Positions 12,316 through 15,195 of a stretch of DNA of 64,000 bases are shown piece after piece (within the stretch, counting starts at the first letter, position 1; every line of letters begins with the position of its first letter). This stretch comes from Octopus bimaculoides. Its lineage: Eukaryota. The position numbers and the translations under genes are program-made. The notes below the pieces were generated by a model, which did not search any database, was not told the origin of the DNA, and saw nothing but the letters and a program-made list of their open reading frames with translations. The stretch covers positions 6,023,282 through 6,087,281 of the forward strand of contig NC_068983.1 of NCBI RefSeq assembly GCF_001194135.2, written 5' to 3'.

Positions 12316-15195
12316 TTACTCGTATATATAAATTGTTTTTACAGGATGCGTTACCGGTGTAGGGATATGTACGCAGCCAGGTCTACACACAGATGGACAA
12401 GAAGTATTTATAATTCGAGTGGAGGTGCATGGTGTCATTGTTGTTTCCATAATGTCATAAGAACTAACTGACTTACCAGTACAATCTGCGAACTCTAATC
12501 TGCATAATGGTGTGTCAATTTCCTCTGAGATCTCAATATTAAAGTTTTGTAGGCAACAGTAGTGGGTGAGTCCAGTGATTGTTATAAATATATCAAATTC
12601 ATCGTCACTGTCACAAACCACAGTTGATGACTGAGAGTCCTCACATAGTTCAAATGTTGTTGTTGGCGGTGGAGTGAAGTCTTCTATTACCTGTATTACC
12701 TTCGGAAGAGCTACTTCTGTCACCTGATCAATACACACGGACAGAGGAGGCTCTTCAACGACCTGAGCTATACATACTGGCTGAGCAGGCTCCTCCGTAA
12801 CCTCAGCCACATACACGCATGGCTCAGCAGCTTCTGTGACCTCAGTTATGTATACCGGTGGCGCAGGTACTTCTGTTATTTCCGCTGTAAATACTGGAGG
12901 AGCAGGCTCTGGTACGGCTTCAAGTATAAATTCTGGTGGAGAAGGTTCCTGTACGGCTTCAAGTATTATTTCTGGTTGGACGGGTTCTTGTACGGCTTCA
13001 AGTATTATTTCTGGTGGAGAAGGTTCTTGTACAGCTTCAAGTATTATTTCTGGTGGGGCGAGTTCTTCCATTGTTTCGGCAAAAACTTCAGTTCGGACGA
13101 TTTCTTCTACGATCTCAGGTACAGATTCTGGTGGAGCAGTTTCTTCTACGGCCTCAGGTACAGATTCTGGTAGAATGGTCTTTTCATCCTCCTCAATTAC
13201 ACATACAGGCAAAACCAGCTCTTTCCGGAGGCGGGGTACAACTTCTGGCTCTTCAACGACCTCAGGTGTAATTTCTTCAATGGTGGGCTCTTCCACAATC
13301 TCAGGAATAATTTCTGGTTGAGAGATCTCTTCAACGACCTCAGGTGTAATTTCTTCAATGATGGGCTCTTCCACTGTCTCAGGAATAATTTCTGGTGAAG
13401 CTGGCACTTCAACAACCTCAAATATTTCTGGTGGGGCAGGCTCTTCTGTTTCAGGAATAATTTCGGGCTCTTCAACGGACTCAGTTGTAATTTCTTCTAC
13501 TGTTTCAGGAATGATTTCTAGTGGTGGCACTTCTTTAACCACTTCAGCTACAATGTCTAGTAGAGTGGGCTCTTCGATAAGCTCAGCTACGAACACTTCC
13601 GGAGCGGGCTCTTCAACCGTCTCAGTTAAAACTATTTCCGCAGCGGGCTCTTCTGTGATCTCAGTTAAAACTATTTCCGCAGCGGGCTCTTCTGTGATCT
13701 CAGTTAAAACTATTTCCGCAGCGGGCTCTTCAACCGTCTCAGTTAAAACTATTTCCGCAACGGGCTCTTCTGTGATCTCAGTTAAAACTATTTCTGAAGC
13801 AGGCTCTTCTGTGATCTCAGTTAAAACTATTTCCGAAGCGGGCTCTTCTGTGATCTCAGTTAAAACTATTTCTGAAGCAGGCTCTTCTACTGTCTCACTC
13901 ATAAATGTTTCCGAAGAAGGTTCTTCTGAGACTTCAAGTACAAGTATTTCTGGAGAAGGCTCTTGGACCTGAATTGCGCATACTAGAGCAGGTTTTTCTG
14001 TAATTTCAATGGTCTCTTCTAGGTGTATAGGTTCTTCTATGACTTTCTCTGTATACGCTGGAGGAGTAGGTTTTATATCAACTTCATAGAGTTCTGTTTG
14101 TGATAGAGCTGGAGATGACTTGGGTGTAGGCGGATATGATAGTTTGTCATCTTCCGCAGTCGGTGTTGGTTGACGTGATTCCTGCTGGTCCTCTGACGTT
14201 AGAGATTTAGACTCTTCTAAAGTATCCTTTTGTAGTACCAGTTGCAAATCAATTCTTTCTTTTTCAGAATCACTTATTGCTTCAGTCTCTTCACTTTCTG
14301 GCTCCAGTTCATCTGTGAGCTCTATTATTTCCAATGGAGGTTCGTCCGTCGTATCCTTTACACTTGCCAATGCAACAGTCTCATCTGGCATTTCAACAAT
14401 CTGTGGTGATATATCAGAACTTTTTTCTAATTGTTGTTGTTCAAAGTCTGCAGTGACTTCAACTATTATGGGTGATTTAATTTTATCGTCTTCTGTTTCA
14501 GTCTCATCCTCTTTTGCCTTAACATCTTTACTTGCAGCTTCCATTTGTGTTTTGTCAGTATAAGTATCTTTTTCTTGCAGAACAGCGGTCTTAGTATCCT
14601 CGAGTTTTTCCGTGCCTGGATCGATATATCTCATAATCTCACCGGTAAATATTGTATGGCATTTGTGCCTGCATGTTGTAAATGTCAGGTTTGCATCAGC
14701 TCCTATATCTGATATCGATTCTGGTTCGCAACAGTCCGGAATAGACATTGACAGACAACTATTTTCCATGCAGTCTGACAAGCATAGAGGTTCACAACAG
14801 TCACATGTTACGTCCGAAAATGTCAGCGACCTACAACAATCTCTTCCACACATCGAATATTTTTGTCGTTCACATGTTTTCCCCATCAGCCGATAAATTG
14901 TCACAGGGCCAGGGGTGTTTCTTATTATTTCAGAAGTTGTCATTGGATCGGCATTTTTCCCCGCGATCTCTGAAAGTGTCAGCGGTCTACCGACGTGTTC
15001 TATAATTTCTGAAACTGTGTGTGGTTCACAAACAACTCCCAAAGCATTCGAAACCCTCATACATTCAGGTATGTTTGTCGCAGAATCTCCTTGTTGCCTA
15101 CATCGTTGTTCTGCGGTCGAAGCGATTCGCTGTCGACTCTCCTCTTCCGAGTCCTCGGAGAGTGTTTGCGGTGAGTGATTGCCTCTCCTCTTCAT
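12316..15195 (-). CDS. Uncharacterised 959-aa acidic (Glu/Pro/Ile/Val-rich) tandem-repeat protein with Cys-rich N- and C-terminal regions, encoded in a single large exon
   Basis: The ORF track gives a gap-free 969-codon ORF from a TTG at 15225. The first ATG is at 15195 (aaaATAATGA, A at -3). The translation is complex and non-microsatellite, with 13-aa repeats (e.g. EEPASEIVLTEIT). AATAAA lies ~60 nt past the stop. The frame stays open upstream to a TAA at 15286-15288, and a TTTGTTCTAG acceptor at 15273-15274 means upstream exons are possible. Confidence 0.85.
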   Translation of the reverse strand: MKRRGNHSPQTLSEDSEEESRQRIASTAEQRCRQQGDSATNIPECMRVSNALGVVCEPHTVSEIIEHVGRPLTLSEIAGKNADPMTTSEIIRNTPGPVTIYRLMGKTCERQKYSMCGRDCCRSLTFSDVTCDCCEPLCLSDCMENSCLSMSIPDCCEPESISDIGADANLTFTTCRHKCHTIFTGEIMRYIDPGTEKLEDTKTAVLQEKDTYTDKTQMEAASKDVKAKEDETETEDDKIKSPIIVEVTADFEQQQLEKSSDISPQIVEMPDETVALASVKDTTDEPPLEIIELTDELEPESEETEAISDSEKERIDLQLVLQKDTLEESKSLTSEDQQESRQPTPTAEDDKLSYPPTPKSSPALSQTELYEVDIKPTPPAYTEKVIEEPIHLEETIEITEKPALVCAIQVQEPSPEILVLEVSEEPSSETFMSETVEEPASEIVLTEITEEPASEIVLTEITEEPASEIVLTEITEEPVAEIVLTETVEEPAAEIVLTEITEEPAAEIVLTEITEEPAAEIVLTETVEEPAPEVFVAELIEEPTLLDIVAEVVKEVPPLEIIPETVEEITTESVEEPEIIPETEEPAPPEIFEVVEVPASPEIIPETVEEPIIEEITPEVVEEISQPEIIPEIVEEPTIEEITPEVVEEPEVVPRLRKELVLPVCVIEEDEKTILPESVPEAVEETAPPESVPEIVEEIVRTEVFAETMEELAPPEIILEAVQEPSPPEIILEAVQEPVQPEIILEAVQEPSPPEFILEAVPEPAPPVFTAEITEVPAPPVYITEVTEAAEPCVYVAEVTEEPAQPVCIAQVVEEPPLSVCIDQVTEVALPKVIQVIEDFTPPPTTTFELCEDSQSSTVVCDSDDEFDIFITITGLTHYCCLQNFNIEISEEIDTPLCRLEFADCTGKSVSSYDIMETTMTPCTSTRIINTSCPSVCRPGCVHIPTPVTHPVKTIYIYE
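12890..13060 (-). repeat. Second 39-bp coding sub-array, ~4 copies of VQEPSPPEIILEA
   Basis: Recurring ttcaagtattatttctggt... at 39-nt spacing, matching the translation. Confidence 0.85.
13600..13900 (-). repeat. 39-bp coding tandem repeat, ~7-8 near-identical copies of (T/V)EEPA(S/A)EIVLTE(I/T)
   Basis: The unit tcagttaaaactatttccgcagcgggctcttctgtgatc recurs every 39 nt on +. Confidence 0.9.

What the first reader, a model, noticed from the sequence alone, without database searches (positions are those of the whole stretch)
12316..15195. Orphan-like 959-aa acidic protein: Cys-rich ends joined by a long 13-residue repeat rod
Seen in the sequence: one exon encodes about 17 Cys in the first ~180 aa, about 13 Cys in the last ~160 aa, and a central Glu/Pro/Ile/Val region of roughly 30 thirteen-residue units. 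There is no signal peptide or hydrophobic TM stretch, and I recognise no domain. Inference: this layout (cross-linkable Cys-rich ends plus an extended acidic spacer) suits a lineage-specific intracellular structural protein, such as a sperm accessory, cytoskeletal or cornified-type component. Automatic pipelines often label such proteins 'titin-like' from composition alone, which would not indicate homology. This is the best candidate for undescribed biology in the window.
Basis: partly seen in the sequence, partly recalled or inferred. Interest (0 to 1): 0.7.

Follow-up and report, generated by a model that had tools for sequence, protein, structure and literature searches.

The report
Orphan acidic 13-residue repeat protein gene
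A real 959-codon open reading frame on the minus strand encodes a very acidic protein built almost entirely from in-frame 39-base repeats, with cysteine-bearing ends and no detectable relatives; its function cannot be settled from sequence, so it is a moderately interesting lineage-specific gene.

Summary
The protein has 32 Cys (17 in aa 32-179, 13 in aa 793-941), 18.8% Glu, 10.3% Pro and pI about 4. Its central array has about 34 thirteen-residue units. There is no signal peptide and no TM segment. The ORF is far beyond chance: 0 stops in 430 non-repetitive codons against 27 expected.

One new point: the Cys-rich N end (aa 43-172) is itself a diverged 13-residue array (z=9.3), with Cys at fixed unit positions. 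Nearly the whole protein therefore arose by serial amplification of a 39-bp unit.

No Pfam domain, solved-structure relative or homologue of either end was found. An exhaustive search of 1.84 billion proteins returned 30 hits, all to the repeat region. The 21 I inspected are unrelated 13-residue-periodic proteins. The databases may not cover this organism, so "orphan" is only a weak negative.

My best reading is a non-secreted, lineage-restricted polyanionic spacer or rod protein with Cys clusters that anchor or cross-link it. A secreted matrix protein with a missed first exon is the main rival. Interest is modest.

The parts
12316..15195 (-). Complete ATG-to-stop ORF, 959 codons plus TAA. It is uninterrupted, so it is a single coding exon.
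15070..15195 (-). aa 1-42: hydrophilic R/S/Q/E-rich leader (MKRRGNHSPQTLSEDSEEES...). It is not a signal peptide. GC rises from 0.29 to 0.54 exactly at the ATG.
14680..15069 (-). aa 43-172: old, diverged array of ten 13-residue units (x-E-P-x-T-x-S-E/D-I...). It carries 14 Cys, concentrated at unit positions 1 (5 times), 9 (3 times) and 13 (2 times), and includes three CC doublets.
14038..14679 (-). aa 173-386: non-periodic acidic linker rich in E, D, T and K. Net charge is about -33 (computed on aa 186-386). It falls on the disordered side of the charge-hydropathy plot.
12685..14037 (-). aa 387-837: main array of about 34 thirteen-residue units (consensus E-E-P-a-p-P/E-E-I-I/V-L-x-E-x-V/T). 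E is 26.8%, P 14%, V 14% and I 11.8%; net charge is -116. It contains at least three young sub-blocks with 78- or 117-nt higher-order periods. The last units (aa 788-826) acquire Cys.
12319..12684 (-). aa 838-959: aperiodic C-terminal tail rich in Thr, Ile, Ser and Cys, with 10 Cys including one CC doublet.
15273..15283 (-). Possible splice acceptor (tttgttctAG) 78 nt upstream of the ATG. If used, it could join an upstream exon, either as 5' UTR or in phase 1. Unverified.
   Evidence: read from the sequence
12252..12257 (-). AATAAA hexamer 59 nt downstream of the stop codon, a possible polyadenylation signal. Such hexamers are common by chance in AT-rich DNA.
   Evidence: read from the sequence

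Best explanation
Shown: this is a genuine protein-coding gene, or at least a complete ATG-to-stop coding exon. It has no detectable relatives and was built by repeated in-frame amplification of a 39-bp unit. The oldest, most diverged units form the Cys-bearing N-terminal array. The youngest, near-identical units sit in the middle.

Shown: the product is a ~106-kDa, pI ~4 polyanion with no signal peptide, TM segment or known domain.

Inferred: translation starts at the ATG at 15195 and the protein stays in the cytoplasm or nucleus. The ~450-residue Glu/Pro/Ile/Val array, together with the 200-residue acidic linker, acts as an extended, highly charged spacer or rod that may also bind cations. 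The Cys clusters at the two ends (17 and 13 Cys, four CC doublets) fix or cross-link the protein through disulfides, metal ions or S-acylation.

Rough sub-probabilities:
- real coding gene: 0.85
- no known family: 0.8
- non-secreted: 0.6
- spacer with Cys anchors as the working principle: 0.4
- specifically a sperm or cornified structure: not estimable from these data
For: Coding:
- 0 stops in 430 non-repeat codons against 27 expected, and a strong dependence of base on codon position.
- All unit-to-unit spacings are multiples of 3.
- This is the only long N-free ORF in the window.

Growth by repeats:
- 39-nt arrays of 70-87% identity with 78- and 117-nt higher-order periods.
- 13-residue periodicity in both the centre (autocorrelation 0.51) and the N end (0.265, z 9.3).

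Translation start and non-secretion:
- GC jumps from 0.29 to 0.54 at the ATG.
- The 30 open codons upstream contain no Met and resemble AT-rich non-coding sequence.
- The N-terminus is hydrophilic and the maximum 19-residue hydropathy is 1.25.
- A heuristic scan of 8.7 kb upstream found no candidate signal-peptide exon in the right phase.

No known family.

Spacer analogy: several of the unrelated proteins hit by the repeat (P0012, P0015, P0025, P0030) carry E/P/V/I 12-13-mer arrays attached to or lying between non-repetitive parts of the protein.

Disorder: the linker is clearly on the disordered side, and AF2 single-sequence models give mean pLDDT 36-37.
Against: - No transcript, protein or orthologue evidence of any kind was obtainable.
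- The exact protein is absent from a 15-billion-sequence collection, so it may be unannotated or unexpressed.
- pN/pS among repeat units is 0.59-0.73 and a frame-shifted control gives 0.77. There is therefore no clear amino-acid-level constraint within the array.
- The central array sits on the order/disorder boundary (H 0.511 against 0.506), and AF2 draws one strand per unit at low confidence. It may not be a disordered spacer.
- Cys-rich ends with a Thr/Pro-rich centre are also typical of secreted proteins. A possible splice acceptor upstream of the ATG and assembly gaps at 16852-17367 and beyond leave room for a missed first exon.
- The copy number of the array in a gap-ridden short-read assembly is uncertain.
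Confidence: 0.45

Rival explanations
1. It is a secreted extracellular matrix or mucin-like protein. An unrecognised upstream exon supplies a signal peptide. The Cys-rich ends form intermolecular disulfides, and the Thr/Pro/Glu-rich tandem repeats form an extended, possibly O-glycosylated or Ca-binding domain.
For: - The architecture of Cys-rich termini around a central tandem repeat fits. Thr is 9.9% and Pro 10.3%.
- The frame stays open for 30 codons upstream of the ATG, and a tttgttctAG acceptor-like site lies at 15273-15283.
- Assembly gaps upstream could hide an exon.
- The protein contains 8 S-x-E motifs, among them the SEDSEEES cluster at the N-terminus.
Against: - GC content rises sharply exactly at the ATG, and the 30 upstream codons look non-coding.
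- No signal-peptide-like first exon with a compatible donor was found in 8.7 kb upstream. This was a heuristic scan and the gaps could not be searched.
- Pfam reported no family beyond two sub-threshold noise hits, so no VWD, C8, TIL, CTCK or other extracellular Cys domain was found.
- Glu at 27% of the repeat is atypical for mucin domains.
Confidence: 0.2
2. It is not a functional protein gene. A 39-bp minisatellite with one open frame expanded, and the long ORF is an untranslated by-product or a recently dead gene.
For: - The protein is absent from all protein collections searched.
- pN/pS among units does not differ from a frame-shifted control.
- Antisense frames are also partly open within the array, at 161 and 204 aa.
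- The ORF sits in a repeat-rich, gene-poor neighbourhood.
Against: - About 550 codons outside the young repeats are open where about 34 stops are expected.
- The N-terminal array has diverged to about 26% self-identity yet keeps its frame with no stops.
- The coding frame has 0 stops, against 4-41 in each of the other five frames of each region.
- Database coverage of this organism is doubtful, so absence means little.
Confidence: 0.1
3. It is one large internal exon of a bigger gene, such as a titin-, sallimus- or MAP-like giant cytoskeletal protein, with a PEVK-like elastic segment.
For: - The composition is E/P/V/I-rich and spring-like.
- A possible acceptor lies upstream, and GT dinucleotides lie near the 3' end (CCG|GTAACG, CCT|GTAAAA, AAG|GTGAGA).
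Against: - Pfam reported no PPAK, Ig or Fn3 domain in the ORF, and no family at all in 10 flanking ORFs within about 8 kb.
- K+R together make up only 5.5% of the protein, whereas titin PEVK is Lys-rich.
- An in-frame stop lies 31 codons upstream, there is a GC step at the ATG, and the frame ends in its own stop followed by AATAAA.
- tblastn finds no related coding sequence elsewhere in the window.
Confidence: 0.08
4. It is an ORF of a transposable element. One database hit has a 13-mer array in front of a LINE-type endonuclease/RT.
For: - P0005 shows that 13-residue arrays can precede non-LTR retrotransposon domains.
- The ORF is flanked by interspersed repeats.
Against: - No RT, endonuclease, integrase or zinc-knuckle domain was found.
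- There is no second copy in the 64 kb.
- No adjacent pol-like ORF exists.
- No database copies were found.
Confidence: 0.03

Closest known systems
Titin PEVK segment and invertebrate PEVK-like springs (from general knowledge; Pfam PPAK motif)
   Same: A long tandem array rich in Pro, Glu and Val with little predicted stable structure. It plausibly acts as an extended or elastic acidic spacer that could bind Ca2+.
   Different: - The unit is 13 residues, not 26-28.
- It has almost no Lys and a net charge of -116.
- It is much richer in Ile, Val and Leu (32%).
- There are no flanking Ig or Fn3 domains and no PPAK hit.
- Cys-rich ends are absent from titin PEVK.
Acidic E/P/V-rich repeat segments in unrelated database proteins (P0012, P0015, P0025, P0030, P0014, P0019)
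   Same: These have near-identical unit logic, for example EEPVAEIVEEVA and EEEVIPEVIAE. The arrays are attached to or lie between non-repetitive parts of the protein. They were found by the exhaustive search at E 1e-4 to 1e-6.
   Different: - Their origin is not established; I did not look up these six.
- The similarity is confined to the repeat.
- None has Cys-bearing repeat variants or similar termini.
- This is convergence, not homology.
P0020: linker-histone-domain protein with EEPAPPEIISCTF 13-mers (JGI sample 3300031056)
   Same: The unit length is the same (13) and the core EEPAPPEI(I) is shared. Identity is 46-48% over 73 aa to aa 708-780. It also has Cys inside the units.
   Different: - It has a Pfam Linker_histone domain and basic tails.
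- It has only about 7 units.
- There is no DNA-level similarity and no shared non-repeat sequence.
- Homology is unproven.
Gel-forming mucins and secreted matrix proteins (architecture only; general knowledge)
   Same: Cys-rich N and C ends flank a long Pro/Thr-containing tandem-repeat exon.
   Different: - No signal peptide is present at the ATG.
- No VWD, C8, TIL or CTCK domain was found.
- The repeat is dominated by Glu and by Ile/Val rather than Ser/Thr.
High-sulfur keratin-associated proteins and the sperm Cys-rich structural proteins SMCP and ODF1; also the acidic, Pro-rich repetitive sperm protein FSCB (recalled from memory, a lead only)
   Same: CC-x-P type motifs (CCEP twice, CCRS) occur in a short-period repeat.
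   Different: - No Pfam Keratin_B2 or other hit was obtained.
- The period is 13 residues, not 5.
- Cys makes up only 11% of the N-end region (aa 43-185).
- FSCB itself was not compared, as its sequence was not on hand. A literature search gave no more detail.

Membership tests
Titin PEVK / PPAK-motif proteins | 26-28-residue PPAK repeats detectable by the Pfam PPAK model | tested here: not met
   hmmscan against Pfam-A at E<=10 returned no PPAK hit. The unit length is 13 aa.
Titin PEVK / PPAK-motif proteins | Lys-rich as well as Pro/Glu/Val-rich composition | tested here: not met
   K+R make up only 5.5% of the whole protein. In aa 387-837 neither K nor R is among the eight commonest residues, and net charge is -116.
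Titin PEVK / PPAK-motif proteins | Embedded among Ig/Fn3 domain exons of a giant muscle protein gene | tested here: not met
   No Ig or Fn3 domain occurs in the ORF or in 10 flanking ORFs between 8.9 and 22.1 kb. Short exons and sequence lost in gaps cannot be excluded.
Gel-forming mucins | N-terminal signal peptide | tested here: not met
   The first 30 aa have mean hydropathy -1.79. No candidate upstream signal-peptide exon was found (a heuristic scan).
Gel-forming mucins | VWD/C8/TIL N-terminal and CTCK C-terminal Cys domains | tested here: not met
   No Pfam hit was obtained for the full protein or for the ends scanned alone.
High-sulfur keratin-associated proteins | Pentapeptide CCxPx repeats matching Pfam Keratin_B2 models | tested here: not met
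   No such Pfam hit at E<=10. The Cys follow a 13-residue register.
Metallothioneins | Short protein (<100 aa), about 30% Cys in CxC/CC/CxxC clusters, matching family models | tested here: not met
   The protein is 959 aa. Cys is 11% in the N-end region (aa 43-185), the richest stretch measured. No Pfam hit.
DUF4777 (Pfam PF16007) | Score at or above the gathering cutoff of 34.4 bits | tested here: not met
   12.2 bits for the full protein and 15 bits for the N end alone, over 21 residues of the periodic xxSEIxx units.
Non-LTR retrotransposon ORFs | Endonuclease, RT or zinc-knuckle domains, and multiple genomic copies | tested here: not met
   No such domains and no other copy in the window. 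Genome-wide copy number could not be tested.
Taxonomically restricted (orphan) gene | No homologue outside a narrow lineage, but conserved and expressed within it | tested here: inconclusive
   No homologue of the ends was found among 1.84 billion representatives or in the other searches. Coverage of this organism's relatives is doubtful. Conservation and expression within the lineage could not be examined.
FSCB (fibrous sheath CABYR-binding protein) | Sequence similarity to vertebrate FSCB; testis-specific expression | not tested
   No reference sequence was on hand and no expression data could be reached. The resemblance is recalled from memory only.

The most novel reading that the evidence does not exclude
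The 13-residue units may not be a floppy PEVK-like coil. Each would contribute a Pro-bounded Ile/Val strand, stacking into a regular, Glu-coated beta-rich rod. The older N-terminal units would use Cys at fixed positions 1 and 9 as a disulfide or metal ladder, comparable to 12-residue antifreeze beta-helices. That would make this a new structural repeat class, born recently by minisatellite expansion in one animal lineage.
Probability: 0.1. Interest if true: 0.6.

Novelty: new member of a known kind. Interest (0 to 1): 0.3.

Why it matters
If expressed, this is a clean example of a large protein, about 106 kDa, assembled almost wholly from one 39-bp unit. Old units at the N end have acquired a Cys ladder, and young units are still expanding in the middle. 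It would therefore be a useful case for studying how lineage-specific genes grow and gain new chemistry.

If the array forms a regular acidic rod, or if the protein builds a specialised structure in gametes, skin or suckers, it would add a new structural material protein. As it stands it has no function, no expression evidence and no relatives. Such repeat-rich orphan ORFs are common in large invertebrate genomes, so the practical value is modest.

There is also a methodological lesson. HMMER E-values as low as 1.7e-24 arose between unrelated proteins that share only a 13-residue periodicity.

Tried and rejected
1. Full-length word-indexed homology search. It collected 8000 candidates and none scored E<=1e-3.
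2. The same search with the N end alone (aa 1-200) found nothing.
3. Exact-sequence look-up of the protein in 153 billion gene positions: not on record.
4. Exhaustive phmmer search. All 30 hits covered only the repeat region. I read 21 of them and judged them convergent periodic proteins rather than homologues.
5. Two metagenome-contig scans, one with the N end and one with the C end. Pattern matches appeared but tblastn confirmed no relative.
6. PDB sequence searches with both ends gave nothing meaningful.
7. AlphaFold2 single-sequence models of the N end and of the full protein had mean pLDDT 36.8 and 36.2. That is too low to interpret or to send to a fold search, so no fold search was run.
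8. pN/pS among repeat units was 0.59 for the 8 young units and 0.73 for 24 units. A frame-shifted control gave 0.77, so the test is uninformative.
9. A database calibration with the window's Tc1/mariner fragment gave a best identity of 72% and no cephalopod-named hit. The species could not be confirmed, and it could not be shown that its proteome is in the database.
10. Literature searches on octopus acidic repeat or testis proteins, on orphan or single-exon genes, on literal peptide strings and on FSCB gave nothing usable.
11. A scan for an upstream signal-peptide exon found none.
12. Rfam and tRNA scans of the window found nothing.
13. The relation to P0020, a histone-H1-like protein with EEPAPPEIISCTF units, was examined. 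I rejected it as demonstrable homology because there is no DNA similarity and no shared flanks.
14. The retrogene idea has no support. No poly(A) tract or target-site duplication was seen around the ORF.
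Full report

Yes. The ATG is at 15195 and the TAA stop at 12318-12316, giving 959 codons.

- There are 32 Cys: 17 at aa 32-179, 13 at aa 793-941 and two in between.
- Glu is 18.8% and Pro 10.3%, with 223 acidic against 53 basic residues. There is no Trp, and pI is about 4.05.
- Tandem Repeats Finder reports 39-nt-period arrays across 12894-13964, with 78- and 117-nt higher-order periods.
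- A 24-nt core recurs 22 times from 12749 to 14053, at spacings that are all multiples of three.
- Parsed as protein, aa 387-837 make about 34 units, 24 of them exactly 13 residues long.
- The N-terminus is hydrophilic and no 19-residue window exceeds a Kyte-Doolittle value of 1.25. There is thus no signal peptide at this Met and no TM helix.

**2. Is it more than chance?**

Clearly.
- The 430 codons upstream of the young repeats have no stop where shuffles give 27.
- The last 119 codons have none where 7 are expected.
- Within each region, the other five frames carry 4-41 stops each.
- Base composition depends strongly on codon position (chi2 104.6, p 3e-20 in the non-repeat part).

Every other long ORF in the 64 kb either runs through N gaps or is microsatellite translation.

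GC content rises from 0.29 to 0.54 exactly at the ATG. The 30 open codons upstream of it contain no Met and look like AT-rich non-coding DNA. These two points support the ATG at 15195 as the translation start.

**3.

The Cys-rich N end is not a separate non-repetitive domain. Residues 43-172 lie in a perfect 13-residue register: PECMRVSNALGVV / CEPHTVSEIIEHV / GRPLTLSEIAGKN / ADPMTTSEIIRNT / ... / CRSLTFSDVTCDC / CEPLCLSDCMENS / CLSMSIPDCCEPE. The lag-13 autocorrelation is 0.265 against 0.061 in shuffles (z 9.3; no shuffle reaches it, even taking the maximum over all lags). Its Cys sit preferentially at unit positions 1 (five times), 9 (three times) and 13 (twice).

The rest of the protein divides as follows:
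- A ~200-residue acidic linker, aa 186-386, is aperiodic and on the disordered side of the charge-hydropathy plot.
- The main array has several young sub-blocks: aa 435-538, 596-647 and 710-761.
- The last units of the array (EAAEPCVYVAEVT, EEPAQPVCIAQVV, EEPPLSVCIDQVT) again pick up Cys.
- Only aa 838-959 are aperiodic.

The simplest history is a gene that grew by serial in-frame amplification of one 39-bp unit. The old units are at the N end and amplification is still active in the middle.

pN/pS among units is 0.59-0.73 and does not differ from a frame-shifted control at 0.77. Selection is therefore visible as maintenance of the frame and of composition, not of exact residues.

**4. Surroundings**

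- The ORF sits in about 4.2 kb of unique sequence between SINE-like interspersed copies at about 11940-12115 and 16340-16700.
- Assembly gaps lie at 11741-11896 and 16852-17367.
- tblastn and blastn find no paralogue in the window.
- Ten neighbouring ORFs between 8.9 and 22.1 kb have no Pfam domain.
- Rfam and tRNA scans are empty.
- A tttgttctAG acceptor-like site lies 78 nt upstream of the ATG, and an AATAAA lies 59 nt after the stop. Neither is verifiable here.
- A heuristic scan of 8.7 kb upstream found no signal-peptide-like first exon with a compatible donor.
- The plus-strand ORFs of 161 and 204 aa inside the array are by-products of the periodicity.

**5. Relatives**

None were found for the non-repeat parts.
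- Pfam gives only sub-threshold noise.
- PDB sequence searches are empty.
- The word-indexed searches with the full protein and with aa 1-200 gave nothing. They did not even recover the protein itself, and the exact sequence is not on record.
- The exhaustive HMMER pass over 1.84 billion representatives gave 30 hits at E<=1e-3, every one confined to aa ~287-802.

I read 21 of these 30 hits. They are a heterogeneous set, each with its own 13-residue or similar tandem repeat:
- a surface-protein-like sequence with TEPSSETTVTETT units
- proteins with EEPVAEIVEEVA-type acidic arrays
- a LINE-like ORF
- fish and beetle hypothetical proteins
- a zinc-finger protein

This is convergence in period and composition, not homology. 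It shows that E-values as low as 1.7e-24 can arise this way.

The most similar unit is EEPAPPEIISCTF in P0020, a linker-histone-domain protein from a JGI sample. It shares no DNA similarity and no flanks with the ORF. Two metagenome scans with the two ends found nothing.

One caveat matters. A Tc1/mariner fragment from the same window found no hit above 72% identity and no cephalopod-named hit. I could not show that this organism or its relatives are represented in the databases. "Orphan" is therefore a weak negative.

**6. Structure**

AlphaFold2 without an alignment gives mean pLDDT 36-37 for the N end and for the whole protein. I did not use these models for fold search.

The central array is unusual for a PEVK-like coil. 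It is 32% Ile, Val and Leu and lies on the order/disorder boundary (H 0.511 against 0.506). The low-confidence model draws one short strand per unit at aa 417-537. Either a disordered polyanionic spacer or a beta-rich rod remains possible.

**7. How it most likely works**

Shown: this is a real, uninterrupted coding frame for a repeat-built, highly acidic protein with no known domain, signal peptide or TM segment.

Inferred, at roughly 0.4-0.6: it is translated from the ATG at 15195 and stays inside the cell. The acidic linker and the E/P/I/V array then act as an extended charged spacer or rod, possibly binding cations. The Cys clusters at both ends fix or cross-link it through disulfides, metal or S-acylation; four CC doublets are present.

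The rivals are:
- a secreted matrix or mucin-like protein with a missed signal-peptide exon (0.2)
- a non-functional ORF left by minisatellite expansion (0.1)
- an exon of a giant titin-like gene (0.08)
- a transposable-element ORF (0.03)

**8. Comparison with known systems and novelty**

It works most like PEVK-type or acidic repeat linkers, and its layout resembles Cys-ended tandem-repeat proteins such as mucins, keratin-associated proteins and sperm structural proteins. It fails every membership feature that could be tested for those families (see the membership table).

I file it as a new member of a familiar kind: a taxonomically restricted, repeat-expanded, low-complexity acidic protein. 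The Cys ladder in the old units and the possibly ordered hydrophobic-acidic unit are its distinctive points.

Interest is modest (0.3). The gene is probably real and undescribed. But orphan repeat ORFs are common in large invertebrate genomes, nothing here points to a specific surprising mechanism, and the decisive data (transcripts, orthologues, proteomics) lie outside these tools.

Noticed in passing
window 16472-16620: A telomere-like (TAACCC)n tract at 16511-16578 is bracketed by 39-nt inverted arms at 16472-16510 and 16582-16620, 85% complementary (D9 and I1). It could be an interstitial telomeric repeat or part of a mobile element.
   Followed up: no
window 56257-57264 (-) and 25254-25625 (+): These are Tc1/mariner remnants. 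The piece at 56746-57264 matches DDE_3 transposases (PF13358), with a best identity of 72% and no cephalopod-named hit. The piece at 25254-25625 looks like the HTH part of such a transposase, judged by eye only.
   Followed up: partly
window 11940-12115 and 16340-16700, with copies at 17530-17770, 20457-20575, 25895-25943, 33804-33873, 44684-44968, 45904-45972 and 60596-60656: SINE-like interspersed repeats of 70-90% identity flank the ORF on both sides and recur through the window. No tRNA or Rfam match was found.
   Followed up: partly
whole window (29 N runs, e.g. 11741-11896 and 16852-17367): Nearly all N runs are bounded by (TA)n or (CA)n microsatellites, as expected for a short-read draft assembly. 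The copy number of the near-identical 39-nt units at 13567-13964 may therefore be unreliable.
   Followed up: no
L002 218-859 (protein P0020; JGI sample 3300031056): This 213-aa protein has a Pfam linker-histone domain followed by six EEPAPPEIISCTF 13-residue units and basic tails. The repeat core is 46-48% identical to aa 708-780 of the ORF, but there is no DNA similarity. It is an odd acidic, Cys-containing repeat inside an H1-like protein.
   Followed up: partly
window 12836-13321 (+) and 13358-13972 (+): Antisense ORFs of 161 and 204 aa, rich in Ser, Gly and Thr, run through the repeat array. They are most likely by-products of the 39-nt periodicity rather than genes.
   Followed up: partly
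database hits P0001-P0030: phmmer gave E-values from 1e-4 down to 1.7e-24 between the ORF and clearly unrelated proteins that share only a 13-residue tandem period. This is a caution for automatic labels such as 'titin-like'.
   Followed up: yes
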